The notes beneath the pieces are model-generated. The model did no database searches. It was not told the DNA's origin and was given only the letters and a program-made list of their open reading frames with translations. The position numbers and the translations under genes were made by a program. A stretch of 64,000 bases of DNA from Lepidodermella squamata (taxonomy: Eukaryota > Animalia > Gastrotricha), in the NCBI GenBank assembly GCA_047495785.1, contig JBLDXI010000029.1, positions 2,170,001 through 2,234,000 on the forward strand, written 5' to 3'. Positions 1,199 to 43,253 of this stretch are shown one piece after another; position 1 is the first letter of the stretch, and each line of letters starts with the position of its first letter.

Positions 1199-4100
1199 AT
1201 GACTTTACGTAGTTTTATTGTTTTAACAGCGTTGTTGATCTGTTGTTGTTCAGCCTCGATTGAAAATGACGAAGATTACCCGACTGTGAACGAGGACCAC
1301 CACACTGAGGAGGTTTATTCAATAAACACTTCATTTGGGGTTGTTATTTTATTTTCAATTTTAGCGTTTTCAAAGCAGCAAAACCTATCATGACGAAGAT
1401 TACCCAATCGACGGAACTGGAGATAAAGCAAGGTCAGGCGAACAGTTTGAGACTTATGGAGGCGATGATGGGAACGGAGCTGCTCAAGAAGTCGAAGATG
1501 CCGAATCTCAGCGAGCTGAAATAGCAGAAATTTACCAAGAAATCGACGATCTGTTACAAGACGTCAGTGGATTTCAATAAGCTTATTTCAAATCTTATCT
1601 TGATTCTTGATCCATACTAGGACACGGATGATACCGCAGTCGAGGAGAGGTTTCAAGGTTTTGGCGATGAAGATGAAGACGATGAAGAAAGGATGTTCAA
1701 GCAACCAGTCGAGACTGCTGGTTGTGGCGTTCGATACACTGTCGACCAAGCTAGAGCCCTTCTCAACAAAATCAGAGCTGATATGGGCCAGAAGGTCGAT
1801 GGCGAGATACTCGCTGGCGAAAAGGCCAGCAAATGGAATCTGCCTATTCATTACACCTTCGACCCAGCTATTCGTAAGTTACACTGTTACAGTTCCAATA
1901 AAGACATCATTTGAATACTCTATTTAGCTGAAAATGTTCGTGGTCTTATTCGAAATGCCACGCGAGAATGGGAACGGCTGACATGTATCCGGTTTGAGGA
2001 AGTAGAATCAGCACTGGATAATTCTCATGGCATCAAATTTGTTCGAGGGAAAGGGTGAGAATCGAATTTATGTCTCACGTCTGTCTTTGCTCAATATTTC
2101 ATTTCTTTTGTTTTCTAGCTGCTATTCATTTTTCGGCAAATTGAAGTTTCAAGAATTTCAAAATATCTCAATCGGGAAAGGCTGTGATCATGTAAGCGTC
2201 GATTCAATACCTCAACTAAAAATAATTTTTATGTAATTTTTCTAAATAGCCCGGAATTATTGCCAATGAAATTGGCCACGCCCTCAGCACAGTAAGCTTA
2301 TCTTGAATTTTCGACCTATTTAGGCATATTTTTCAGGGACTCGAGACATCTGAGTTGCAGAAAGCAACAAAAGGCTCTCGAAAGAGGATTATCAAGTATG
2401 TTGAATTTTGACCCAAGTATGAATCATGTTCCGAATCTTATTTAGAAATAACCGTAGTACAACAACTGCGAAGCCTAAACGGCGCGGTCGGATAAGCACG
2501 CCAACCCTATCGGACTTGCGTTACACGACTTGCCTCGGGCAGTTGACTGGCATTGTTTTTGGCGATGCAAAGCGGATCAACGAGCATTATCAGTGCTTAA
2601 GTGAGTTGTTCTGAATTTATATCGCGATCAATAGATCTTAACTTCCTTAACTTCCTAAATTGTCAGAGAACCATTGCCGCTCAAGCAGATCTTCAAGCAT
2701 GTGCAAAAATGGTGGCTTCGTGGACCCGAACAACTGCCGTAGATGCATTTGCCCTGATGGTTTCGGCGGGAAAACTTGTGCAGATATCGAACCAACGAAA
2801 TGTGGCGGTATTGTTAAAGTAAAAGCCGGTTCTTTCGGCCGAATTCAGTCTCCCAATTTTCCTCGTAAATACCCTCAAAATACACGATGCGTTTGGTGGA
2901 TCCAAGCTGTAAGTTTGCCAAATTAGCAAAATAATCATGTGCCCTGTGATTTCATCTATTTCTAGCCTGCCGGGAGACAACTGGTTTTTGGCTTCAATGC
3001 AAAGCCTCAGCTCGGGTTATCAAAATTCAATAAAGGTGACTTCGCCAATCATTTTAATCCTCACTTGTTACAATTCAGTCTAGACCTGTGCGACGATTTT
3101 GTTGAAATTAAAACTGACCACGATATGACTAAGAGTGGAAGAAGGTTAGTTTTCGAAAACATCAGCCAGTTGCACTATGGAACGTTTAATTTTTAGGTTT
3201 TGCTCGGTCGGGCCTTCATCAGGCCGCGTGGCTTACACGGATAAGAATTTCGCTATCGTTATATTTGAATCGCACGCTGTTGAAGATAAGAGGAAAACCG
3301 GATTTCAACTCACAGTTTACGTGACTGATGCTGGCGAGAGTTCCGCTGAAATCGCTAGGTCAGACTGTCGACTAACGAAATCTGGATATGACTACGAAGG
3401 CCCTCGGGCTACGACAGATTCCGGCAAAGAATGCGCAGATTGGAACAATGTGACGCCGAAATTGAACCCGGACTACTTCCCTCATGGAGTTATAACTAGC
3501 AACGAGTGTCGCGTGCCAATGGCCTCAAAGGCGCCATTTTGCCATCTGAAATCGAACCTGAAGAAGTTCGAATACTGCGCTAAAATTCCAATGTGTGGCA
3601 GTGGTGAATCGCGGTCGAGTGTAGGTGGCGAAGATCGATTGGTCAAGTCTTTCTTCCTTATCGAAGGGTCGACATGGCTTGAGGCAAACGAAAAGTGTCG
3701 AGATGAAGGCGGCTCACCTGCTGTTCTCACCAATGAAGAAGATAAAGAGCATGCTCTATCATTTCTGGGTAAATCATCGGTGTGGATTGGTATGCGACTG
3801 CTGTTGAAAAACAGTTGCTACTGGGTCAACGGATCGAGGCTGAACTCGGAAGGCCGTGGTATCACCGAAGGCGGTTGCTTGAGTTATCGGCCCTCCGATG
3901 GCTCCGGCTTTGAATCCGAATTTGACGAATGCACTAACTTGAAGCCGTTCATTTGCCAAACGATCGTTTCAGCTACGGTTTGTTTTATCTAGATCAAGAG
4001 TTTGAGGCTTTTGATTCTTGACTTTTGTTATAAAAGATTTCTAGCCTAAGCTTTGATGTCCAAAACTTATCATGGCACGAAGCAGCATCGTTCTGTGAAA

Positions 4101-18686: not shown

Positions 18687-19587
18687 CACCTATAAACCTA
18701 AACTATTGCTTAACACATAAAGCGCTCTCATATTAAACGAAGATTTCGAAAGATAAATTTGAAATGATAATTCTGTTCTTGCAATTAGGAGCTTCATTTC
18801 CTTGTAACGTTATAGGGCCGCAGGAAATTTTAGATTTTTCCATACGAAACGGGAGTTATAATCAGACAGTAAGACTTCAAATACAACGTACGGAAATGAA
18901 TTGTCAGACACACTCATGATTAGCATATAGCATATAGGAAGCATTTTGAGGCCTTTAACTTGAGAAAATTTCTGAAAATTGGCGAGGAACGCTAGGGGCT
19001 CAACGGAAGTTCCCAGTAGGTTTAGCTTCAGGCAATTATTCAATTAAACCTTCTACCAAAGTTGTACGCGATTAAAAATGGTTACGCATTTTATTCCAAG
19101 AGTCATTGCAACGCCATGACACACTGCATTTAGTACCAGTGACATGTAAGAGTTCAATACGTAGGAGGACACGGATAGCATTGACTTCGCCATTAATGCT
19201 TATACGAGCTCGACAGGAAACGCGAATCGTGTCCAGTCGTTTCGCCGTGGCTCTATTAGGACATATTGTACACGAAAGAACAAACGCGGGTAGACGTTAA
19301 AAAATCGAAGGCTCGGTATTTCGCATTCCAGGTGTATCGAATATAACAGACAAAGATGTTCCTTTTTCGCTCACTCATGCACTGCATAGAGAATTTTACT
19401 CTGTATTGACTCATGCTTCCCACTGAGATCAATTTCGCGTACATACAAAAATATGACACCCATCCCAACATGATAAAAGCTTCCGTGACGATCTTGGCCC
19501 TGAAGATACACAATTTGCAGACATTAGGTGATCAATTTTTATGACAGGTGGGTAACGATTAGCATCAGCCTAGTAGTTACAGTAACA

Positions 19588-21906
19588 ATGAAAAGCGCAT
19601 ACCTGACATACTTGGTTCTTTTGACGATACAGCATGTCTATGCAGCAGAAAGATTAACCATTATAGCACTGATACCGCCAAGTTCAGATTCCGGAGGAGC
19701 CAATGTCTGCCAACATTCGATGGAGGTAGCTATTGACTATGTAAATAGAGGCCACGCGAAAATCCTCTCAAATTACTCGCTAGAAGTCGCCTACCTCGAC
19801 GAAGGCGCTCTCTCAAGTGATGCGCCATTGAACTTTGTCAAGTTCATCTCAGGATACAATGCTGAATCTGGCACGTTTCTCGCACCGGTTGTAGTCGGAC
19901 CATACTATGCTTGCAATACTGTTTCGTCAATCATTCGCAGCTTCAACATGGTACAATTCGCAACTTGGTGTGGAAGTTCTATGTTTACAGGAAATCGCTT
20001 GAAGTTCCCTAACTTGTACCGACGCGTTACTCCACAGGAGAATTATTTCGTCCCATTTTTATACCTCGCTAAAATGATTGCGAAATGGAATCAAGTGGGT
20101 ATAACTTATTCGCCGGACAATTTGTCAGAATCCTTGGCGGCAAAATTATTCTTGCAGACTTTTGAAACCGAATCAAGAGCCGTTGTATGGATTTCTCCGT
20201 TTCTACCACTGCAAGCCGATGACGTTCTTGTATCCCTGAGAAAAAGTGATGCGAGGATCATTTTTCTCGGATTTTTCGAAAACTTTCAACTAATTCAATT
20301 TCTCTGCGCGGCTCATCGGAGGGGTGTTAGTGGTGATCGATACCACTTTGTAACGTATACAACCGCTTTTTCTGACCCCGGAACTTTGAATCTCACAATG
20401 CAGGAAAATTGCAGTAACGAGGTGGTGGATGAAATGTTCAGTCGAACGACATTCATCGGGAACTTTGAAGGTCTAGCATCTCCGACCAATAAAAACTCCT
20501 CGATAGGATATGATATTGCTGAGTTCGATCGGCGATTGGACCGATTGCTGAACCACTCTAAGCCGCCAGAATATCCGAAAAGGTACGTATGCCACGATGC
20601 AATGCTACACGCACTGACATCGCTTCACCAAGCTGAAATTCGATTGGCCAGGGAAAATTTGACCCTGAAAAACTTCTCAACCCATCCGAGGCAAGTTATG
20701 ACAGCCGTTAACCAATCTGCCGCCGCAGCTGATTATGAGGGTCTTCAATTCCGACTAAAATACTCCAGGGACCGATTAGAATCTGATGGGAGGTTTCAGG
20801 GCATCGGGCAGTATTTCACCGAAGACCGAAAGTTACATCTTATCTGGCGTTTGTGGCACAACGGCGAAACTAGCGCAACCGTTTACAACCTCAGTTATTA
20901 CGACATTGTTCAGTATCTGGAACCAAGTTGGAAAACGAAAAACGGGGATATGCCAAAAGATCTTTCAATTGTCAAGCATTTCACGAAAATTGTTCCATTA
21001 GCCGTATTTTGGGCTGTCGTTTTTCTCGCATTTACAGCATCGATTCATTACGTGCTATTGATGATTAAGCTGGAGATAGTCAGAAGAAAGCACTTTCCCC
21101 TATTTATCGCTGCATTTTTGGAAAACTGCGCTGCAATTACGTTCGTGTCCCCTGCCTCCGCGATCATTTGCGTCTTACAGGCCTTCCTTGCTGCCATGGG
21201 GGTGGCCTTTACTTCAATCTTCCTCCTCGCGAAGTTGATCTCCATTTACATAGCCGCGAAAAGGTTCGCCGCTAAAAGATATCGACCACATTCGAATAAA
21301 GTGGGCAAAGCGAATAAAGGCAAGAAGATTAGTTCTGCATTGAACGCCGCGAAACCTGAACCTCGGACGAAAAAGCTGTTGCGCCACGCCTACCCGATTG
21401 TCGCGACAACTCTAACCGTAGCAAATACTGTTATTGTGACATCATGGCTGGCGAGTTTGGATTTCACGCATCCGTTTACTGTTGTTAGCAATCATCTGTA
21501 TGACCAAGAAGAGGACAAATATTACGATTTATCCTTTGAAATATGCGCGGAGAACTATTTGTCCCCGAAATCAATCGCTTATCTACATCTTTTAATTCAA
21601 ATTGGCTGCGCCTATGTCACTTTCAGGTTCTACACTATGAGTCAAATACCTTTGGAAATTGCCGAAGAGGTGAAAATGCTGCAAATAGCTAGTGTGAATT
21701 GTTTGGTCATTTTCGTTCTGGTCTTGATTGCTGTAAATGTCCCATTTCCAATACTTCAAAAGCAGGAGATCAGAGCGTTTGGCCTGTTGATCCACGGTAA
21801 TTCATGCGTTGCGGTTATCACAGTTATTTTCAGCAAAATTAGATGTTTCAAGAGGCGGACTCTACCTTCAATAAGTAGCTTCAATCTTAATCGAATATCC
21901 CCTTGA
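19588..21906 (+). CDS. Intronless divergent class C GPCR (GABA-B-like: Venus flytrap + 7TM, no Cys-rich domain)
   Basis: Signal peptide MKSAYLTYLVLLTIQHVYA; AIDYVN..ILSNYSLEV..DE; KFPNLYR; WNQVGI; SDARIIF; FLCAAHRRGVSGDRY; seven hydrophobic segments with Cys at TM3 and ECL2. Confidence 0.85.
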   Translation: MKSAYLTYLVLLTIQHVYAAERLTIIALIPPSSDSGGANVCQHSMEVAIDYVNRGHAKILSNYSLEVAYLDEGALSSDAPLNFVKFISGYNAESGTFLAPVVVGPYYACNTVSSIIRSFNMVQFATWCGSSMFTGNRLKFPNLYRRVTPQENYFVPFLYLAKMIAKWNQVGITYSPDNLSESLAAKLFLQTFETESRAVVWISPFLPLQADDVLVSLRKSDARIIFLGFFENFQLIQFLCAAHRRGVSGDRYHFVTYTTAFSDPGTLNLTMQENCSNEVVDEMFSRTTFIGNFEGLASPTNKNSSIGYDIAEFDRRLDRLLNHSKPPEYPKRYVCHDAMLHALTSLHQAEIRLARENLTLKNFSTHPRQVMTAVNQSAAAADYEGLQFRLKYSRDRLESDGRFQGIGQYFTEDRKLHLIWRLWHNGETSATVYNLSYYDIVQYLEPSWKTKNGDMPKDLSIVKHFTKIVPLAVFWAVVFLAFTASIHYVLLMIKLEIVRRKHFPLFIAAFLENCAAITFVSPASAIICVLQAFLAAMGVAFTSIFLLAKLISIYIAAKRFAAKRYRPHSNKVGKANKGKKISSALNAAKPEPRTKKLLRHAYPIVATTLTVANTVIVTSWLASLDFTHPFTVVSNHLYDQEEDKYYDLSFEICAENYLSPKSIAYLHLLIQIGCAYVTFRFYTMSQIPLEIAEEVKMLQIASVNCLVIFVLVLIAVNVPFPILQKQEIRAFGLLIHGNSCVAVITVIFSKIRCFKRRTLPSISSFNLNRISP

Positions 21907-22127: not shown

Positions 22128-24335
22128 TCATGATTGGTTCATTTTTGGCATCACCATGGGAATAAAGTTTGCTGCTGCAATAGTAATAAGAATAACTAAT
22201 GATAGTATTATGTCATAGCTAAAGCTAGGCGCCAAAATGTACCCGATAGCCACAGCAGCCGTGAAAAGAGTAGATGTCAGTAAACCGGAAAGTTTCGCAG
22301 CTTTCATCTCTGCGTACATTTCCGAAAACCGCTGATTGGTGCGCATTTTCAGGATGCAAAAAATAATCAAAACAAAAACAAGCGAATGAATTGTTAACAA
22401 TGCACCAAGCCATTTACCTGTCCATTTCGATAAGCATACTGTCATTTCTTCATAAACGTAAGTATCCAAGTTAGGGACGTACTCCCCTGGTATCTTCGAT
22501 GAAGTATGCGCATAAATGGGATCAATGTTCAGCCATATTAAAACGGCTAAGAAACTCGCAGTGGCAAAAGCCGACGCGCTTAAAATATCTAGCTTGATGT
22601 TGACTTGAAACGGCACTAAAACGGGTCTCCTATTCGAGAAACCGTTCCGTTGAACTCGACGGCTTTTAGAGCTTAACTTGTCTAAGAATAATTTCATTTG
22701 TGATAATCTCGATAGGATGCCTCCTGAAAGAAATGAAACCCCCAGAGCGGTAGTAATGATTGTTAAAGAGCAAACCAATTGCGTTCGCATTCTAGCTTCG
22801 GCAGAAATTAAAACTGCTGATGAAGAAAGAAATAAACAGCTGAAGAGCTGATTGAAATAACGCCAGTCGACGGAAATTCGCTCTTTCTTTTTGATGATAA
22901 TGACCTTCATAATAAGAAGAATTTCACAACCTGCGATAACAGCAACGATGATAAACCATGGAAGGGGTACCTGGTGTGTTATCCGGCTTGAGCCTGGAGA
23001 GTCGGCCGGTAGATCTTTCCAACTAATAGGATGCAACCCGACGAAACTAAAAGCTCCCGGATCTGTTACATTCGAAGTATTCTGCTGGAGAGATGAGCGA
23101 TATCTGACTAGTAAGCCTTTACCCCGTTGCCAAGTCATGATCACCTGAGCCTCGTAATCCCACTCTAGCCGCTTTGAGTAGTGGAAATTTCCGTATCTCA
23201 GTCCTGTGAAGTTGACACGACTTGTCGATGAATTCGCAATTTTCATAACAAGTTCAGGATATTTCGCATAGTCGCGAATGGTCAAGTTCATGAGCTTTAG
23301 TTGTCTTTCAGTTTCGTTAAGGACGATGAGGCTCTCAAGGGCAGAGTCGTAGCAGGCAAGCCGAAACTGATCCCCATCACGAGCGACGGTTCCAGACCGT
23401 TGGAGTAGCATATGTTTGAAAGATGTCACATTATTCCCGAGCTCATCGTTGCCTGACGGTGTCATAGGAACTGTTTCAGCTGCTCCGATTATCAGTAGAG
23501 ACTGGAGTTGCTCAAGGTAGATACTTTGGTTACATCCTGGTGGGTACAATTGATTTGGGGTGGGTTCTAGAAAGGTAATCGTTGAGACAATGAACATGTA
23601 CCTCGACCCGCTAAGTCCGTTCCTATGAGCAATGCAAAGAAAGGCAAGAGTCTGCTTTCCATCAGCGCCTTCAAAGGTAAATATCCGAATATCATCCCGT
23701 TTGAAGGATATCATCATCTCATCAGAAATATCGATGAACGCTTCAAATCTTTGAACCTTAATTCCAGCTTCTACGGCAATTTCGTGGAAGAAAATCCCGG
23801 TTTCCACTGAGAAACTGTATGCTAAAGCCACGACAATTGCAAGTTTCCGCCAGGGAGTGAATCTTTTGATGAAATGAAGGCGAACTATCAGCCCGAGTTC
23901 AGCTGGACCGCGGACGCGGTACATATTCGGATACAAATTTCGCCTAGCCGTCTGAGCTGGGGCTGTGCAAGATCCTGCGATCATCACCATGTTCATATGA
24001 TGAGCGATGGAACCCCAGGCCTTACAACTGGACGCTGCAATTGTTCCGGCAGTAACCGGCGCAATGAAGCTGCCGTTTTGTCCTGATGGTAGATTTTCTC
24101 GAAGAAAATTCACGCCAGCCGCGGCAGCCCTGGCGGTGAGAGGTTCTTCTTCGCGTATGTCGAACTCCACTCTGTAACCAGGCAGTAGGTTTTGTGAGTT
24201 GGCCATTTCGCCGACTAATTTGAATGCCAGGTGGCATCTTTCAAAAGTCGGAGGAAGTTGCGTCAAAATTACCAGACGGTCATGGTATGCAGTCGCAGCG
24301 ACTTCGAAAACGATCAGAAGTAAGAGGCTTTTCAT
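22128..24335 (-). CDS. Intronless divergent class C GPCR (GABA-B-like), convergent paralogue
   Basis: Signal peptide MKSLLLLIVFEVAATA; LLPGYRVEF; YPNMYRV; WRKLAIV; DIRIF; FLCIAHRNGLSGSRYMFI; CYDS; seven TM segments; very short C-tail. Confidence 0.85.
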   Translation of the reverse strand: MKSLLLLIVFEVAATAYHDRLVILTQLPPTFERCHLAFKLVGEMANSQNLLPGYRVEFDIREEEPLTARAAAAGVNFLRENLPSGQNGSFIAPVTAGTIAASSCKAWGSIAHHMNMVMIAGSCTAPAQTARRNLYPNMYRVRGPAELGLIVRLHFIKRFTPWRKLAIVVALAYSFSVETGIFFHEIAVEAGIKVQRFEAFIDISDEMMISFKRDDIRIFTFEGADGKQTLAFLCIAHRNGLSGSRYMFIVSTITFLEPTPNQLYPPGCNQSIYLEQLQSLLIIGAAETVPMTPSGNDELGNNVTSFKHMLLQRSGTVARDGDQFRLACYDSALESLIVLNETERQLKLMNLTIRDYAKYPELVMKIANSSTSRVNFTGLRYGNFHYSKRLEWDYEAQVIMTWQRGKGLLVRYRSSLQQNTSNVTDPGAFSFVGLHPISWKDLPADSPGSSRITHQVPLPWFIIVAVIAGCEILLIMKVIIIKKKERISVDWRYFNQLFSCLFLSSSAVLISAEARMRTQLVCSLTIITTALGVSFLSGGILSRLSQMKLFLDKLSSKSRRVQRNGFSNRRPVLVPFQVNIKLDILSASAFATASFLAVLIWLNIDPIYAHTSSKIPGEYVPNLDTYVYEEMTVCLSKWTGKWLGALLTIHSLVFVLIIFCILKMRTNQRFSEMYAEMKAAKLSGLLTSTLFTAAVAIGYILAPSFSYDIILSLVILITIAAANFIPMVMPKMNQS

Positions 24336-24788
24336 ATATAATATAGCTGCAACGTTTATAATGTAATGCATCATGTAATCATGTAGGGCAGAAAGGAGAG
24401 TCGGCAGCAAAACAAGGAATAGTAACTAGTAAGAATGATTAATGATTAGCAAGATTAACAGCGATCGAAGCTGTTGCAATTTGGAAGCCTGCAAAACTAG
24501 CACACCGGTTGGGAAATTAAAGATTACGCCGTCACCTCGCTAATGTGACGTGCTCTCAGCCTCTATTCGAGGCTAATAATTCTCATTTCGACAATGCGGG
24601 GTTGATGCAGTGAATGGGATGCCTGACTTCATTCTGGAAAAACAAGAGTCAGCGATTTTAATTGGCTTCAAAGGTGCGATGAAAATCAAGCTCCGCCTCC
24701 AGTCCTGATCACCGAATTCTTCAGTTAATTATTCATTGTGAACTTCTTGTTCAAGTCCGCATTGTAGAAACCATATCCTGACATATGT

Positions 24789-35762: not shown

Positions 35763-37047
35763 CTATTTGTCCAGCCGGAATGCTCGACATAATTCTGAGT
35801 CGGGTGACAATAGATCGGCGGCGGTTTTCCATGCTTCTGCGTAAATTGACTGACTAGGCTGTTGGCTTTGATCGGACTCAGCTGTTGATCCAGCTAGCGA
35901 GCTATGGATAGCTCTAATTTGAATTAACCGACCAGCTATGAAAACCTGTATTTTCAAAAATCAAAAAAATTTCAAATAAAATTTTTAAAATTTATTAAAT
36001 TTTTTATTTATTTAATAATTTTAAATTTGAATAATTTCACGATTTTTCTTCATTTTTTCTTACACAATTTTAACCGATTTTTAAAAACAAAGAATTTTAC
36101 CGGAAGAACTTCCAACTCTGCTCGAGTTAGGCGAGCATGTTGATCGTAGGCTTCCAGAAAAGCTCGGGCGCATTTTGGTCTATCACATTCTCCGACCATT
36201 ATTCCAGTCAAAGCAACAGTTGGCTCCATGAGCCGATGCGTGACTCGAGCGTCAGAAAAATCAAAACATCCTACAATTTGCTCGCGGTCTTCACTGCTGA
36301 CCAACAGATTTCGGCCATGCAAATCGCAATGAACCATTTGTATCGGTAATTGGCCATCAATGATCAATGGAACAATTTTTGAGTCGTAAATCTCAAGGTA
36401 CCGCTCAGCAAACGAACGCTGCTCATCAGGTAATTTTGCGATCAATTGCCGCGTGTCGTAGTAAGAAATTTTCATCAATAAATCAGTCGTGACTCGTTGA
36501 TCATAAAATGGGTTCTTGAAGGAACGGAAGGTTGTGTCAAGTCGACCCGCAAAGTCACCGATTCTAGACGCTAAAAGCTCGGTATAGCTCCGATGGACTA
36601 ATTCGCCTTTGAGATACGTCGTAAGTCGAAAACGACGATTTATACCCTGAAAATCTTTGGTGAAAAATTAAAAAAGAAATCAAGGCTGGGAAAGGCACTG
36701 ACTAGTTTCTCCGTAAACCTTTCCATCTATGGTTTTCACAATTTCTGGGACAGGGTAACCAGCTTCCTTACAGAAGGTCATGAGGGCAACTTCAGCCACT
36801 TGGTTTGGAATACAAAATTTAATTTTTAATTATGTCCTTGCTTAAATAGGTCCTTTATACCGATTTGTTCAGCATCAGACGTGAACTCGTCCTTGAAAAC
36901 TTTGAAAGTTAGATCCCCATGGCTTGGCGATACAACATGAAAGGTTCGATCCTCCGATCCTCTTTGTTCAGTCACGGAGGTGGCTGAAATTCCATAAAAC
37001 CTTTTGATTAGGTCCACTAAATCAACTCCCTCAACCAAATATTCCAT
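35763..37047 (-). CDS. HYKK: Hydroxylysine kinase / aminoglycoside-phosphotransferase-fold kinase
   Basis: FYGISATSVTEQRGSEDRTFHV, GYPVPEIVKTIDG, FRLTTYLKG, catalytic-loop VHCDLHGRNLLV, GCFDFSD, FLEAYDQHARLTRAELEVLP; four exons. Confidence 0.8.
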
Positions 37048-37112: not shown

Positions 37113-40100
37113 TTAAACGGTACTGCGTAAAAAGTTGACAATAAACTTTCGACCACCGACAGTTGAAATCAAATTAAGCATAGATTCTGAAAGCGGAGTG
37201 CCAGCGTTTTTTTCGATGAAGGAGCTTAGCAAGCCAACAGCAGCTTCTCGCACCTCGTCCAGCTTAAAATTCCCGGCCATCATTAGACCGTAGAAAACGC
37301 CATCAACGCATAGCCCAGCGACTTCTTCATCCAGAGTGAACGCGGCCGCCTCGAATCCGGCCTTGAAAGCTGGCTGAAAAACAGCCCATGATGTCTCGAA
37401 CATCGCTTTGATAACGCATGTTGGCGGTTTGGCCTTGTCGATGTAAGTCTCCGTGTACAACAATTCGTTACAGGCTACACTAAGATCGCGTCGATTTCGA
37501 GCAGCTCGGAGTGACTCATCCGCCGCTAATCTCATGAGTTCAGTTTGTTGTTCAAACAAAACTGACTGACCATTACCCCGACCGAGTGATGTGGTCAACT
37601 TGACAGGGCTTGAGGAAACGCATTGCCTAACAACTTCTGCTGTTGAAATTGTTACTAGAATCTTGTCCTTCTTAATGCTATCGTAGATTTGTTCTAGGAA
37701 GTCTTTCGCGAAATCTTGACCGTCGTTGATTCCTCGATTGTTCTTGATAAAATCATCCTTCGACATGCGTTGCTTCACATTCGGCGAGTGAAGGTCTGTG
37801 TTCAACATGATAACTGAGAAGGCTAGGGTATGGGCCGAACTCGAGCTAGCAATGGCTGTTTGCCGCTTGTTGCACTGCATGTAACGAGCCGCGAATCGTT
37901 CCATAATCCGATCGATCTTCTGACTCTCGCCGGGCAGACGGAATCCCTGGAGGAAAAGTTTCCTCAACGCGGGTAAGAAGTCGAGATCTGTGAAGTCGAA
38001 TAGATTCATGAATGCATCCATCACATCGAGGTTCTCTGCATCAGGCTCGCCGAGATAGTCACCAACTGCCGATCGATCTAACCGTCGTTCATTCCGTAAC
38101 AACTCCGCAATATCCCTAGCATTTGCCGATAAGAATCCATTCTCCTGCATGAACTTAACTCCTTTTACAGGGGTTTTGTTGAAGACATCAATTCCATTAG
38201 AGTATGTGATTTTTTTAGCGAGATGTTTTGAGAAGGACTTGAACGAATGCTTACTCCTCGTTGAGTTGGCCTTTTGATGCAGGTCGGAAAGATGCTTCAT
38301 CAAAGCAACAATGTTTCGATAGCATTCCTTTTTCACTGCCATATCTTCCTCTCGAATACTGTTGCTGAGAAACGAAAGACCAGGAGTTGCTGGCACATAG
38401 TTTACCATCTGAAGGACCAGAACCGCAATTTTCTCGAAGAAGTTGGGGTAAAAAATTTGGCAGTCGTATTCGATGAAGATTTCAAACAATTTGTCCTGCC
38501 TGCATGTTAAATCGAGAAGAAAACGCCGAATAACAGTCTTGAAATCCTGAGGGACGTTCTGGCTCTCGTAGCAGAAGATGAAGTACTCAAGAAGCAAAGC
38601 AATCTCGTCCTTCAGGGCTGATCTCACCCCGACAGAGTCGATAAGTTGGAGGGTTAGGGCTATCAATCGATCTAGAAGTTCAACTGTACAGTTGAAGCCA
38701 CTTTCGATAAGAGCGAATTGAAAATGCCGTTGAGCTGCTGCCAGTAAGTTTTCTACCCCAGTCTCCTCCCGGGCGTAATTGATCATCAGATTAAGAAAGA
38801 TGAATCTTGACCGCTGTTTGTAAGGCGGAAGTCCTCTAATTTTCACGAATTTATTGTCACCAGTAGAAAGACCGCAGAGGACCTCAAGGATTCTAGTTCC
38901 ACTGTTGAGGAGACCAACCCTAGCCAATGCGGTGTCGGACGATTGAATTTTGCGCATCAGACTGGGTGACGGAGGGACTTCGTCGAGATACGCTAGAAGT
39001 AACTCAAGCCCCGGTGTCTCGCTTTGCTGCGTTGAAAAGATACTCAAGCGCCGTGGCCTGCTCAATGGGGTATGTAAGCTGAAGTCGTAATCCTTTGTGT
39101 CTAGCTTCACTGCCACTTTCATCATATTCAGCAGGTATTCGTCAAAACTCTGCCCGTTGGATATAACATTCAGGTGGAAGCTCACTCCGAATGCTTTCAT
39201 CAGAGTTTCTTGCCGATAGCCTCTAAGCGACGAGACGAAGGTAAATAATGTCTGAAATGAAAAGAATTGATCAAGGAAGAACGCTTCTCATTTCGCAAAC
39301 CTGTACAATGAGGTCTTTGTAGATGGACTCCATTAGTGTATGATGTACGGCTAATGCATCCACCCATTCTTCAGCTTCTGTTACATTATTTTCCAAATAA
39401 CCAAGAGCTAGCGATTTCTAAAAATAATTTCTCCAGTAGAAAGCAAGGGATAATCAGAGGTTCAACTTACCTGAAAGCATTTTAGAGCAACTTTTGCCAC
39501 CGGTAAAGTGTTTGTTTGGACTGCAAGTTTAAGGAAGAGCAAAAAGCGGCGCGAGTTTAAAACATAGGGCAGGTCATCAGCCATTCGGCATCGAACGAAA
39601 GACTCAGGCGAAAGTGAGCTGTTTCTAAGGCCAAAATTGTTCAAATGAAGAAGCTGAATCTGTATTCGAAACTTACGGTTCAAGACCATCTATAGATAAA
39701 TCTTGAATTAAACGCGAGTTTTAGGAAAATTCGGAGCTTACCTAGACTAGCGCTGAAAGGGCTAAAGTGCTTCGTTTCGTATTTCAGCTTAACCTTTGAC
39801 CGAATCTTCTCCAGGGCTTGGAGCATAAAGTTTGGTAGCAAGTAACGGAGCTTTAATAACTTAGTCATTAAAATAGTCCTTAACAAAGTTCCCCAATGCC
39901 ATACCTTTGCAGGATCAGCTTTTGTCACTAAACAGCACATGACTAAATGTCTGAAGAGCCGATCGACATTCTCGCCTGATTTCGCGCTCGCCAAGTAGGA
40001 AGCTCTGAGCCTCTGTTCATTCGCGAAGATTTTCTTTACAGTTTTTTCTCTGATGATGGGCTTGTCCCCATTTTCTTCGTCCCTTTTGTTACCAACGAGA

Positions 40101-40578
40101 AAAGATACGGGAAAATCTCCTTCTGCGACTCTTTTCTGTATCTGCTCCAACCAAAATGACATGACTGACAGGGACTTGGGGTTGGTAAGGTCGTATACAA
40201 AAATAATCTGAATAAATGGATGAGCGATTTCTTTCTTCAAAATTTGACAAAATTTACTCCGTGGATCTCGGAGAAGGAAGATTTCCCGATTGCAGATGTC
40301 GGATTGTTAATGTCCTCGGCTTTGACCGATTCAACATTAACGTTAACACACCTACTGCCGACTTGAACACGTTTTGTCTGCGCGGCCTCTGTGAGGATGA
40401 TTAATGAGCTAAAAATGTTAATTGAAAGCAGTGAATTCTTACCAAGTGTATTAGGTGTAGAATCGCTGAATGCGCCCGTTGTCCATCTGTGCATTAATGA
40501 CTTTTTGCCGACTTGAGGATGTCCACATATCACAATCTTTAGAAGGCCACATTTTAATTTGGTGCCAATTAATTCCAT
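37113..40578 (-). CDS. Predicted fusion: Rab-like small GTPase domain + BIG1/2-type Arf-GEF (DCB-HUS-Sec7-HDS1), ~1033 aa, 8 exons
   Basis: Exons 40578-40443, 40388-40258, 40207-39905, 39850-39742, 39689-39677, 39624-39471, 39417-39301, 39251-37113 total 3102 nt in one open frame, with 49-54-nt GT-AG introns. GTPase motifs KIVICGHPQVGKKSL, IIFVYDLT, LVGNKRD, SAKSGENV. BIG-like FMLQALEKI, ALKCFQK, FIEYDC..PNFFE. Sec7 FRLPGESQKIDRIME and IMLNTDLHSPNVK. Each domain call is ~0.9; the fusion itself ~0.75. Confidence 0.78.
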
Positions 40579-41069
40579 TATTCACGGCCGTGTTGGCGGA
40601 TGAGTGGCAAAAGTCTATTTACACATACCTTAATGCTGTAAGTTGAGCTGCTTGAGCGGCTCAATGACGACGATGAGTCATCGCACGTTGACATTTTTAA
40701 CTTATTCACTGTCACCTGATTTTGCCTCCGCGCTATGGCGAAATTGCCGCTTCAAACACGTTGTAATAGCGCATCCGCGTGACCGTTGTAAAAAATGAAG
40801 ACGAACATGCGGCGTGTGAAGTGTGCTATTGCTTTTTCTCGTGTTATTTTTATACCTTTAGCTATTATACACGTAGTTATTATCGCCGCTTTACTCTAAA
40901 ACGCTTCAATTTATCTTCGACATGTTTAAACATGCAGATAAAGTCTTGGGTATGCATTGTACCGTAATTTTACTTGTGGACTTTCTTATCGTAATGGTCG
41001 AGAGTAATCGCGCCTACTATTACTTGGAAACGTTTTTTTTGTGAGAAGAAACAAATCGATAATTATCAC

Positions 41070-41141
41070 GGTTCCATGGTGTAGCGGTTAGCACTCTGGA
41101 CTCTGAATCCAGCGACTCGAGTTCGATTCTCGATGGGACCT
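41070..41141 (+). tRNA. tRNA-Gln(CTG): tRNA-Gln, anticodon CTG
   Basis: GGTTCCA/TGGGACC acceptor stem, A box TGGTGTAGCGG, anticodon arm CTGGA-CTCTGAA-TCCAG, T arm CGAG-TTCGATT-CTCG; T6 run at 41149-41154. Confidence 0.97.
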
Positions 41142-41256: not shown

Positions 41257-41488
41257 AAGATCATACTTCTTGGGATCATTACTTTATTAAGTTTTGCCCC
41301 AACGTCAGCCTCATCTGACGACAAACCCAAACCGCGATGACGAGGCGTGGTGACTGGCCCTGAGCGCGAACTTGGCCGCACTTGACTGGCTATCATTAGC
41401 CGGTCTGGTCGGCCGTTGATGAACGTTCCGGGCTGGTGGCTCCTTAATTGGGGCCACTTCCGGAGGGGTCAGTCGCTTTCAGAGCGGC
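41257..41488 (+). ncRNA. U3: U3 snoRNA
   Basis: 5' AAGATCATACTT (GAC/A' region), box A GGGATCATT, box C' GATGA (41336-40), box B GAGCGCGAA, box C TGATGA, box D variant CAGA (41480-83), terminal stem CCGC/GCGG; order, spacing and ~232-nt length match U3. Confidence 0.9.
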
Positions 41489-41607: not shown

Positions 41608-43253
41608 TTAGACAATTATTCCTTTACAGCCAGTACCTTGACATTCGGGATAAGGGAAAATGTTGGGCAGCACTGAAACCTCTGATGTGAACACAAGTTG
41701 GCCAAATTTATCAGCCGGAATAAAATCACCAATGAACGACCCTAGCTCAGTCCCAAATTCCTTGTACTTGATTTCGATGAGCGAAGCAGACCACCGACCG
41801 TCCCCAGGAGCATCAACTTTACCGCGATAAGTCCGTTTCCCGTTGACAATCGTTTCGTTCAGCTTGACCTTGCTCCATAGTGATTTAAGGTTCGCGCAAT
41901 AAGATGAAACCGTGAAACCGCAATCGCACGGTTTATCGAAACTAGCCATTCGAAAATCCCGTCGCAACTTGTTGCCATCGAAGGTGTTCTTCCCGCAGGA
42001 GTTCGCGTGCCATAGACTAGCTTCGTGGACCTGACCATGATCATCTAACGTGACGACGATTTCTCCAGTCACATTCGAAATTTCCCAGGTAAATGTAGGA
42101 ATGACACGATCTTTCAGCATGTAATCTGCCCAAGTGCTGAGGCCAGGAACTAGTTCCAACAGACCAGTCACCATCATATGCTCAGCATTAGGTACCATCA
42201 TAAACCATTTCGGGCCAGGCATATCTTTCCACCAGTAGTGCGTATCGTCAGGTTGCTGAAATTCGTCCAAAACAGCATTCATAACCAATTTTGGCACGGT
42301 TAGTCGCTGTCTGTAGAAATACGGGTCGATTTCACGCTGTAGCATGGCCATATTTGGGGTGTCTAAACGCTCCGTTATGTTCATTTCAATGTAGTCTTGC
42401 AACGCCCAGCCAAAACCGCCGTAAGACCGCCATTGATGATGGGCAACCGCGGCGAAGTTGATTGCGTCTAATACAACTGGGGCGATGGCTTTTACCCGCT
42501 TCGGATCAACAGCACCAACATCCCACGTTGTCCATCCTCTTTTCGACGCTCCAGCTACGATGTAGGAATCAAGCTCGTAGCCTTGTTCGGGGAATTTTCG
42601 CTTCATGAATTGTGTAACGGTGTCCATTGCTCTTAGAGAGGCTTTAACCATTGGGAAATACAGAAGCCATTCTGGTTTCGATGGGTCCTTGAGGAAATGG
42701 TCCCAGGTGAAGGAGACCGCTGCGTCTTCTCTTCGCGATTTTTTGAGAGGATCGCTTGCGAATGTGATACCTTGATTCGGAATGTTTCTTAGAAACCCGA
42801 CAACAACTCCGACTCTCGCTGCTAAGGCAGCACAGGCGAGGAGTTCGTCGTTCTTCGGGCTTACAGGTCCAGCGGTATTGTCGCCACCAGTAATCCTGTT
42901 TCCAAGAGCCACGTAATGGAAATAAAATAAGGCTTAAATTGCTATTCTTACCATAGGGTCGCGTTTCGCGTATACTTTACGTTATCTGGCACAATAACGT
43001 AAAGGTAGTGCCACCAGATTGATTTTGTATTCGAATCCGGGGTGAATTCATCATCGGTAAGCCACTGCTGTGAAGTCATGTTCAAAGCATACGCTGTCCA
43101 CTTATGGCGGCCGAGTATCTCTTTGCCATTTATAGTCCGGCCCAAATCCACCCATTTGTAGTTTGGGTCGTTTCTCCAGACGTAGTCATCTAAGGCAGTG
43201 CAATTGGCACCGATGAACAGAAAATTTAATAGAATAAAAATGAAGAAAATCAT
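41608..43253 (-). CDS. PhoPQ-activated pathogenicity-related (PqaA) / Dictyostelium AprA-like secreted alpha/beta-hydrolase-fold protein
   Basis: Signal peptide; TALDDYV..D..Y; LNMTSQQWL; WWHYL.VIVP; IPNQ...F..DP..KSRREDA; PMVKA..RAMD; VAGASKRGWTTW; DPYFY..RL..PK; DEF..PD; VPNAEH. One GT-AG intron at ~42950-42896. Confidence 0.88.

What the first reader, a model, noticed from the sequence alone, without database searches (positions are those of the whole stretch)
37113..40578. Degenerate Rab-like GTPase fused in frame to a truncated BIG/Sec7 Arf-GEF
Seen: the Rab-like frame has no stop codon and no C-terminal prenylation tail. After helix 5 (LFRHLVMCCLVTKADPAK) it runs, with or without the stop-free 54-nt intron 39904-39851, directly into FMLQALEKI, which resembles the first DCB helix of BIG1/2 (FLTRALEKI). 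Eight exons give one 3102-nt open frame. The GTPase keeps G4 (NKRD) and G5 (SAK), but G1 reads GKKS instead of GK[S/T] and the G3 WDTAGQE motif is absent (VESVKAED), so it looks like a pseudo-GTPase. The Sec7 glutamate finger (FRLPGE) is intact, while HDS2-4 are missing. Known: large Arf-GEFs are recruited and activated in trans by small GTPases (Arl1 at the DCB domain; Ypt1, Ypt31/32 and Arf1 at HDS domains of yeast Sec7). Inference: this gene may have lost the C-terminal regulatory domains and gained a covalently attached GTPase-fold regulator. I do not know this architecture from characterised proteins.
Basis: partly seen in the sequence, partly recalled or inferred. Interest (0 to 1): 0.88.

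Follow-up and report, generated by a model that had tools for sequence, protein, structure and literature searches.

The report
Dead Rab-like domain fused to Arf-GEF
One spliced, expressed animal gene joins a degenerate Rab-type GTPase domain to a shortened BIG/Sec7-type activator of Arf GTPases; a distantly related organism has the same join, and I found this design in no paper or database searched.

Summary
A spliced RNA contig (run X1) removes every predicted intron, including the 54-nt one at the GTPase-to-DCB junction, and uses the 13-nt micro-exon. It also removes one further intron (40537-40628).

An ortholog on four metagenome contigs (38% identical, 1024 aa) has the same layout: Rab-like domain, DCB, HUS, Sec7, HDS1, stop.

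Both proteins share the same GTPase defects:
- G1 reads GxxxxGK[K/R]S.
- Switch I is degenerate or deleted.
- WDTAGQE is replaced by xxxAED[IV].
- NKxD and SA[K/A] are kept.

The GTPase domain is the second-best conserved part (43%; Sec7 52%). The GEF part is BIG-type: it matches BIG1/2 at E 1e-60 and Gea at 1e-29, and the ortholog's AlphaFold model matches the full-length Sec7 and Gea2 structures. HDS2-4, which hold the autoinhibition and dimerisation modules of yeast Sec7, are missing.

I found no protein with both Ras and Sec7 domains, and no paper describing one. I class it as a new variant of a known kind. The regulatory role of the dead GTPase is inferred, not shown.

The parts
40629..40694 (-). 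True exon 1: ATG at 40692-40694 and a Ser-rich 22-aa N-terminal extension
   Evidence: The X1 spliced contig joins 40629 to 40536. There is an in-frame stop upstream and this is the first ATG.
40537..40628 (-). Intron 1 (92 nt, GT..AG).
   Evidence: joint 40536/40629.
40443..40536 (-). Exon 2: beta-1 and the P-loop GHPQVGKKS (40498-40524), then a degenerate switch I
   Evidence: (weak Ras/Roc match).
40258..40388 (-). Exon 3: beta-2/beta-3 and the G3 position, where ESVKAED (40312-40332) replaces WDTAGQE
39905..40207 (-). Exon 4: C-terminal half of the Rab-like domain, with the RabF5-like FVYDLT, G4 NKRD, G5 SAK and helix 5
   Evidence: Pfam Ras at E 1.4e-9. The listed 60 of 70 PDB hits are all Rab/Ypt/Sec4 proteins.
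39851..39904 (-). 54-nt stop-free intron at the GTPase-to-DCB junction, removed in RNA
   Evidence: joint 39850/39905. The ortholog has no counterpart of these 18 codons.
39742..39850 (-). Exon 5: short linker and the putative first DCB helix (LRYLLPNFMLQALEKI...)
   Evidence: It aligns with KLSILIPDFILKGIAKI of the ortholog.
39677..39689 (-). 13-nt micro-exon
   Evidence: The letters GGTTCAAGACCAT sit between joints 39624 and 39742 in the X1 contig.
39301..39624 (-). Exons 7 and 8 (39471-39624 and 39301-39417), which hold the DCB core, plus the intron 39418-39470 between them
   Evidence: hhalign against the DCB regions of BIG proteins gives probability 93%, E 3e-7.
37113..39251 (-). Exon 9: HUS (about 38457-38819), Sec7 domain (37659-38213, glutamate finger FRLPGE at 37926-37943), HDS1-like region and the stop codon (37113-37115)
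   Evidence: Pfam Sec7 at E 7e-70 and HUS at E 3e-5. PDB BIG1/2 at E 1e-60, and Sec7 8ucq aligned through HDS1. The AF2 model of the ortholog matches 8ucq and Gea2.

Best explanation
This is one protein-coding gene (9 exons, 1041 aa). Its product is, from the N-terminus: a Rab-derived pseudo-GTPase domain, then about 8 linker residues, then a BIG/Sec7-family Arf-GEF core (DCB, HUS, Sec7, HDS1) that stops where HDS2 would begin.

Shown here: the fusion is transcribed and spliced as one frame. It is conserved in a second, deeply diverged organism. The gene is under purifying selection. The catalytic Sec7 domain is canonical.

Inferred:
1. The protein is an active Arf1-type exchange factor.
2. 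Because it lacks HDS2 (the autoinhibitory domain of yeast Sec7) and HDS4 (its dimerisation domain), it is not controlled in the way canonical BIG/Sec7 is.
3. The N-terminal G domain has lost the Mg2+ and gamma-phosphate sensors (P-loop Ser/Thr, switch-I Thr, DxxGQ) but kept the guanine-binding motifs NKxD and SAK. It therefore no longer cycles as a switch.
4. The G domain instead serves as a permanently attached interaction or regulatory module. Either it docks in cis on the DCB-HUS surface that binds Arl1, Rab1 or Rab11 in trans in other BIGs, or it targets the GEF to a partner or compartment.
For: - Spliced RNA: one contig carries the G-domain exons and the DCB/HUS exons, with the junction intron removed.
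- Ortholog: the 1024-aa model from L006 has the same order of domains, the junction inside one exon, the stop at the same place and two shared intron positions.
- Shared defects and shared retained motifs in the G domain.
- Identity by domain: G 43%, Sec7 52%, DCB 37%, HUS 32%, HDS1 31%.
- Of the variants listed for X1/X2 against the window, 29 are synonymous and 6 non-synonymous.
- The Sec7 domain is about 50% identical to ordinary BIG Sec7 domains and has the intact FRLPGE and IMLNTDLH motifs.
- The AF2 model of the ortholog's GEF part (pLDDT 81, pTM 0.80) matches the Sec7 and Gea2 cryo-EM structures over about 780-850 alignment columns.
- Literature: HDS2 autoinhibits Sec7, truncating HDS2-4 raises GEF activity, HDS4 dimerises, Rab1 and Arl1 recruit and Rab11 stimulates (PMC10927569). 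Arl1 binds DCB helices 1, 4, 6 and 8 (PMC4956616).
Against: - No experiment or structure here bears on what the G domain does. I could not fold the spliced G domain or the whole protein, because spliced sequences cannot be given by reference.
- Retention of GxxxxGK, NKxD and SAK leaves open that the domain still binds nucleotide and even switches.
- The RNA evidence comes from assembled contigs, not single reads. A minor isoform without the G domain cannot be excluded.
- Pfam does not detect DCB or HDS1 on the pieces. DCB rests on hhalign and on the fold of the ortholog. The first DCB helix was not included in the hhalign match.
- Only two species are known to have the gene.
Confidence: 0.6

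Rival explanations
1. The N-terminal domain is still a working, if atypical, nucleotide switch. For example, it could bind nucleotide without Mg2+, with the conserved Lys/Arg after the P-loop lysine standing in for the metal. The GEF would then be gated in cis by the nucleotide state of its own G domain.
For: GxxxxGK, NKxD and SA[K/A] are conserved in both orthologs. The replacements are themselves conserved: K/R after GK, and AED[I/V] at G3. The G domain is 43% identical between orthologs.
Against: The P-loop Ser/Thr, the switch-I Thr (deleted in the ortholog, Ser in the X1 allele), the DxxG Asp and Gly and the catalytic Gln are all missing. In Ras-superfamily proteins these are needed for Mg2+/gamma-phosphate sensing and for the switch (established knowledge).
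Confidence: 0.2
2. The G domain is only a structural or solubility appendage, or a relic, with no specific role. The protein is simply a short BIG paralog.
For: The switch motifs are degenerate. The domain has no lipid anchor (no Gly2, no C-terminal Cys).
Against: It is the second most conserved domain between two orthologs whose Sec7 domains are barely closer to each other (54%) than to ordinary BIGs (50-52%). The fusion is therefore old and the domain has been kept under constraint.
Confidence: 0.12
3. Two products are made: a Rab-like protein and a separate short BIG that starts at MLQALEKI, from an internal promoter or from spliced-leader trans-splicing at the 39850 acceptor. On this view the fused contig reflects a precursor or a minor form.
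For: An in-frame ATG sits at the start of the DCB helix. The evidence is an assembled contig, and itself warns that a contig across two genes shows no single transcript.
Against: The Rab-like frame has no stop codon before the DCB exons, whether the intron is spliced or retained. The cis-splice 39905/39850 is seen in RNA. In the ortholog the junction is inside one exon, with no acceptor site there and Ile instead of Met.
Confidence: 0.06

Closest known systems
BIG1/BIG2 (ARFGEF1/2) and yeast Sec7, large Arf-GEFs of the trans-Golgi
   Same: DCB-HUS-Sec7-HDS1 core. The glutamate finger FRLPGE and the IMLNTDLH motif are present. The best PDB matches are the BIG1 and BIG2 Sec7 domains (E 1e-60) and full-length Sec7 8ucq.
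   Different: It ends after HDS1 and has no HDS2-4, which carry autoinhibition and dimerisation in Sec7 (PMC10927569). It carries an N-terminal G domain that no described BIG has. Outside the Sec7 domain it is very divergent: a search restricted to that region found nothing.
[quoted passage not shown]
   Same: An Arf regulator with an N-terminal, atypical Ras-like G domain in the same polypeptide (PMC2542466 and PMC6358971).
   Different: AGAPs are GAPs, not GEFs. Their G-like domain is not Rab-derived, and the rest of the architecture (PH, ArfGAP, ANK) is unrelated.
TBS proteins (Sec7-PH-TBC) of alveolates and haptophytes
   Same: A lineage-specific fusion of an Arf-GEF with a module of the Rab system, read as Arf-Rab crosstalk (PMC6727740).
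   Different: The Rab-side module there is a RabGAP (TBC-N) at the C-terminus of a cytohesin-derived Sec7. Here it is a Rab-fold pseudo-GTPase at the N-terminus of a BIG-derived GEF.
Rab GTPases (nearest solved: Rab5a/Ypt51, Sec4, Rab6, Rab12, Ypt7)
   Same: G-domain fold by sequence. NKxD, SAK and a RabF5-like FVYDLT are present. The listed 60 of 70 PDB hits to the C-terminal half are all Rab/Ypt/Sec4 proteins.
   Different: No P-loop Ser/Thr, no DxxGQ, a degenerate switch I and no prenylation tail. No Rab subfamily can be assigned (E only about 1e-6).
Trans regulation of BIG/Sec7 by Arl1, Rab1/Ypt1, Rab11/Ypt31 and Arf1
   Same: A small-GTPase fold acting on a BIG-type GEF. The Arl1 site includes DCB helix 1, which here begins about 8 residues after the G domain (PMC4956616; PMC10927569).
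   Different: Here the GTPase fold is covalently attached and lacks the switch regions through which Arl1 contacts DCB. Whether it docks there is untested.

Membership tests
BIG/Sec7 subfamily of large Arf-GEFs | Sec7 catalytic domain with the glutamate finger | tested here: met
   Pfam PF01369 at E 7e-70, covering model positions 2-183 of 183. FRLPGE lies at 37926-37943. The motif is invariant in the 76-sequence alignment.
BIG/Sec7 subfamily of large Arf-GEFs | Closer to BIG than to GBF/Gea or cytohesin | tested here: met
   PDB matches: BIG1 and BIG2 at E 1e-60, cytohesins at 1e-49 and weaker, Gea2 and Gea1 at 1e-29 to 1e-30.
BIG/Sec7 subfamily of large Arf-GEFs | HUS domain | tested here: met
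   PF12783 scores 24.3 bits on the window exon, below the gathering score of 27.3. It is on record for the ortholog P0001. The fold of the P0001 model aligns with Sec7 and Gea2 over the whole N-terminal region.
BIG/Sec7 subfamily of large Arf-GEFs | DCB domain | tested here: inconclusive
   Pfam DCB is not detected on the exon pieces. hhalign of the two orthologs against BIG DCB regions gives probability 93%, E 3e-7, but only for the core helices. The resemblance of the first helix is by eye.
BIG/Sec7 subfamily of large Arf-GEFs | HDS1 domain | tested here: inconclusive
   PF09324 is not detected. Residues 324-663 of the window's 695-aa last-exon ORF align with 651-985 of Sec7 8ucq, which covers Sec7 plus the following region. 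The ortholog's model has helical repeats after the Sec7 domain.
BIG/Sec7 subfamily of large Arf-GEFs | HDS2, HDS3 and HDS4 domains | tested here: not met
   The protein ends about 155 aa after the Sec7 domain. The stop is at the same position in both orthologs, and the next gene starts 65 nt downstream.
Rab GTPases | G1 P-loop GxxxxGK[S/T] | tested here: not met
   GHPQVGKK-S in the window and GNPGVGKR-S in the ortholog.
Rab GTPases | G2 switch-I Thr and G3 DxxGQ | tested here: not met
   WDTAGQE is replaced by ESVKAED in the window and TPINAED in the ortholog. The switch-I segment is deleted in the ortholog, and its Thr is Ser in the X1 allele.
Rab GTPases | G4 NKxD and G5 SAK | tested here: met
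   GNKRD/GNKID and SAK/SAA.
Rab GTPases | C-terminal Cys prenylation motif | tested here: not met
   Helix 5 runs into the DCB helix, and the protein ends in ...LRSTV.
Pseudo-GTPases (G fold with lost catalytic or switch motifs) | G-domain homology with one or more G motifs lost | tested here: met
Pseudo-GTPases (G fold with lost catalytic or switch motifs) | No GTP hydrolysis or no nucleotide binding | not testable with these tools
   This needs a nucleotide-binding and GTPase assay on the recombinant domain.

The most novel reading that the evidence does not exclude
A Rab/Arl-to-Arf-GEF activation cascade has been collapsed into one polypeptide. The dead Rab domain sits permanently on the DCB-HUS GTPase-binding surface and holds a BIG core that lacks the HDS2 autoinhibitor in a defined (on or off) state. 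It would then be a natural 'Rosetta-stone' fusion that reveals which surface of BIG-type GEFs receives Rab input.
Probability: 0.25. Interest if true: 0.8.

Novelty: new variant of a known kind. Interest (0 to 1): 0.62.

Why it matters
Large Arf-GEFs are switched on at the Golgi by other small GTPases that bind their non-catalytic domains in trans. How those inputs are read is still being worked out from yeast Sec7 and Gea2 structures.

This natural protein does three things at once:
- It deletes the autoinhibitory and dimerising C-terminal domains.
- It hard-wires a GTPase-fold domain next to the DCB helix that binds Arl1 in BIG1.
- It has kept that domain under selection after its switch motifs were lost.

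That gives a compact, single-chain system for asking where a Rab-fold docks on a BIG-type GEF and what the docking does to exchange activity. It also adds an N-terminal G-domain class to the catalogue of Sec7 architectures. A survey of 506 Sec7 proteins (PMC6727740) reported only the known accessory-domain combinations.

Tried and rejected
- Metagenome scan with G-domain peptide patterns: it gave four loci, all ordinary Rab genes with no Sec7 nearby.
- Exhaustive HMMER search with the G-domain C-terminal half: 198 hits. The best are tandem multi-Ras proteins. The long hits that I scanned (P0254, P0149 and others) have no Sec7 domain.
- Word-indexed search with the junction profile: it found only the ortholog's own 88-aa ORF and one small Ras fragment.
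- Search restricted to the non-catalytic 335 residues: nothing.
- ESM Atlas look-ups: only Sec7-only or Ras-only clusters.
- Paper searches for Rab/Ras plus Sec7 fusions and for pseudoGTPase plus Sec7: no description found.
- Paralogs within the window: none.
- Folding the spliced G domain or the whole protein: not done, because a spliced sequence has no reference and long sequences may not be typed.
- Rab subfamily assignment: not resolvable, since PDB E-values are only about 1e-6 and spread over Rab5, Sec4, Rab6, Rab12 and Ypt7.
- A separate full-length BIG elsewhere in the genome: not checkable. Only this window is readable, and the scan's notes have no Sec7 entry.
- Organism: not established. 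Earlier scan notes guess a rotifer, which I did not test.
Full report
**What is in the sequence.** Pfam finds a full Sec7 domain (E 7e-70) and a weak HUS match on the large last exon. It finds Ras (E 1.4e-9) on exon 39905-40207 and weak Ras/Roc matches on the P-loop exon.

**Transcript evidence.**
- Two public runs hold this stretch.
- Run X2 carries the locus unspliced, in a 1898-nt contig across 39145-41039.
- Run X1 carries one 1885-nt contig from about 40735 to 38395 in which every intron is removed. The removed introns are 39252-39300, 39418-39470, the two introns flanking the 13-nt micro-exon (whose letters are present between the joints), 39851-39904, 40208-40257 and the intron between 40443 and 40388.
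- X1 is therefore RNA. The splice 39905/39850 joins the last G-domain codon to the first DCB codon.
- The same contig also skips 40537-40628. The real first exon is 40629-40694, and the product has 1041 aa from 9 exons.
- Of the variants listed for X1/X2 against the window, 29 are synonymous, 6 non-synonymous and 5 intronic. The gene is under purifying selection.
- Caveat: these are assembled contigs, so a minor alternative isoform cannot be excluded.

**A second species has the same gene.**
- The only close relative of the GEF part among 5.8 billion proteins is P0001, a 793-aa ORF from an ENA metagenome (36% identity, full coverage).
- Its contigs (L001, L006-L009) encode a Rab-like domain upstream, in frame. 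From L006 I built a 5-exon, 1024-aa model.
- There the end of the G domain and the first DCB helix (…VVARSIESEKLSILIPDFILKGIAKI…) lie inside one exon. The 18 codons of the window's junction intron have no counterpart. The window's internal Met is Ile.
- The stop is at the same place (…FLRSTV* and …YLRTTI*).
- Two intron positions are shared: before the (I/L)xxCG strand and before I(I/F)FV(Y/F)D. An intron after …EP is in the same phase.
- The neighbouring APH-like gene is shared as well, though rearranged.
- The two Sec7 domains are 54% identical to each other and 50-52% identical to ordinary BIGs. The two lineages therefore split long ago and the fusion is old.

**The G domain is a conserved pseudo-GTPase.** I aligned both G domains to 60 Rab-like representatives. 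Both proteins show:

| Motif | Window | Ortholog |
|---|---|---|
| G1 | GHPQVGKK-S | GNPGVGKR-S |
| Switch I | degenerate | deleted |
| G3 (WDTAGQE) | ESVKAED | TPINAED |
| G4 | GNKRD | GNKID |
| G5 | SAK | SAA |

- In G1 the Mg2+-binding Ser/Thr is replaced by Lys or Arg.
- In G3 the Asp, the Gly and the catalytic Gln are all missing.
- Neither protein has a prenylation tail.
- The C-terminal half hits only Rab/Ypt/Sec4 proteins among the 60 PDB matches listed, weakly (best E 3e-6). No Rab subfamily can be named.
- Identity between the orthologs by domain: G 43%, DCB 37%, HUS 32%, Sec7 52%, HDS1 region 31%, overall 38%. The dead GTPase is the best conserved part after the catalytic domain, so it is functional.

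**The GEF part.**
- The best PDB matches are the BIG1 and BIG2 Sec7 domains (E 1e-60) and full-length Sec7 8ucq, aligned through the region after the Sec7 domain. Gea and GBF are far weaker (1e-29).
- hhalign of the two orthologs against DCB regions of BIG proteins gives probability 93% for the core helices.
- An AlphaFold2 model of P0001, built with a 76-sequence alignment, has pLDDT 81 and pTM 0.80. It matches the Sec7 and Gea2 cryo-EM structures over about 780-850 alignment columns.
- The protein ends about 155 residues after the Sec7 domain, so HDS2-4 are absent in both species.

**How it most likely works.**
- In yeast Sec7, HDS2 blocks the catalytic face and truncating HDS2-4 raises activity. 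HDS4 dimerises the protein. Arl1 and Rab1 recruit it, and Rab11 stimulates it (PMC10927569).
- Arl1 binds helices 1, 4, 6 and 8 of the BIG1 DCB domain through its switch regions (PMC4956616).
- The protein here is therefore, by inference, an Arf exchange factor without the usual autoinhibition. A non-cycling Rab-fold domain is tethered about 8 residues from DCB helix 1.
- I think the G domain most likely acts as a fixed interaction or regulatory module, either docking in cis on DCB-HUS or targeting the GEF in trans.
- A remaining atypical nucleotide switch is the main rival, because GxxxxGK, NKxD and SAK are kept.
- None of this was testable here. I could not fold the spliced protein.

**Is it known?**
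- None of the searches found a protein with both Ras and Sec7 domains.
- The eukaryote-wide survey of 506 Sec7 proteins reports only the known accessory-domain combinations, plus TBS and ARCC (PMC6727740).
- Paper searches for such a fusion found none.
- The nearest analogues are the AGAP ArfGAPs, which have an N-terminal G-like domain, and the TBS Sec7-TBC fusions.
- I class this as a new variant of a known kind (a BIG-family Arf-GEF), so far seen in two organisms only.

**Limits.** The organism is not identified. Earlier scan notes guess a rotifer, and I did not test that. Whether a canonical BIG coexists in the genome is unknown.

Noticed in passing
window 41257-41488 (+) and 41070-41141 (+): A U3 snoRNA gene (Rfam 104 bits) and a tRNA gene lie just upstream of the fusion gene. 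The tRNA explains the very high DNA depth in run X2 at 40963-41100.
   Followed up: partly
window 41611-42912 (-): A 434-aa ORF matches Pfam PhoPQ_related (PF10142, PhoPQ-activated pathogenicity-related protein) at E 2e-81. From memory this family is mostly bacterial and amoebal, which I did not check here. It is a candidate horizontally acquired gene.
   Followed up: no
window 36089-37047 (-); L006 4103-4987: An APH-like (PF01636 in the ortholog's contig) gene starts only 65 nt after the GEF gene's stop, on the same strand. It has an intron at 36799-36860 that is spliced in X1. In the other organism the homologous gene lies upstream and divergent, so this is microsynteny with rearrangement.
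   Followed up: partly
window 37116-37124 (-); end of the L006 gene model: Both orthologs end in S/T-x-V/I (…RSTV and …RTTI) after a highly conserved last 25 residues (MLNLIS.VGG..FI...LR). This looks like a class I PDZ-binding C-terminus and could be a localisation signal.
   Followed up: no
window 19528-21906 (+) and 22128-24410 (-): Two convergent long ORFs have ANF_receptor ligand-binding domains, and one also has a weak 7tm_3 match. They are class-C GPCR-like genes.
   Followed up: no
window 3177-3992 (+): An ORF combines a Kringle domain and a C-type lectin domain.
   Followed up: no
window 40447-40448: The X1 transcript reads AGC CTT where the window has ACA CTT. This changes the only candidate switch-I Thr of the G domain to Ser.
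   Followed up: partly
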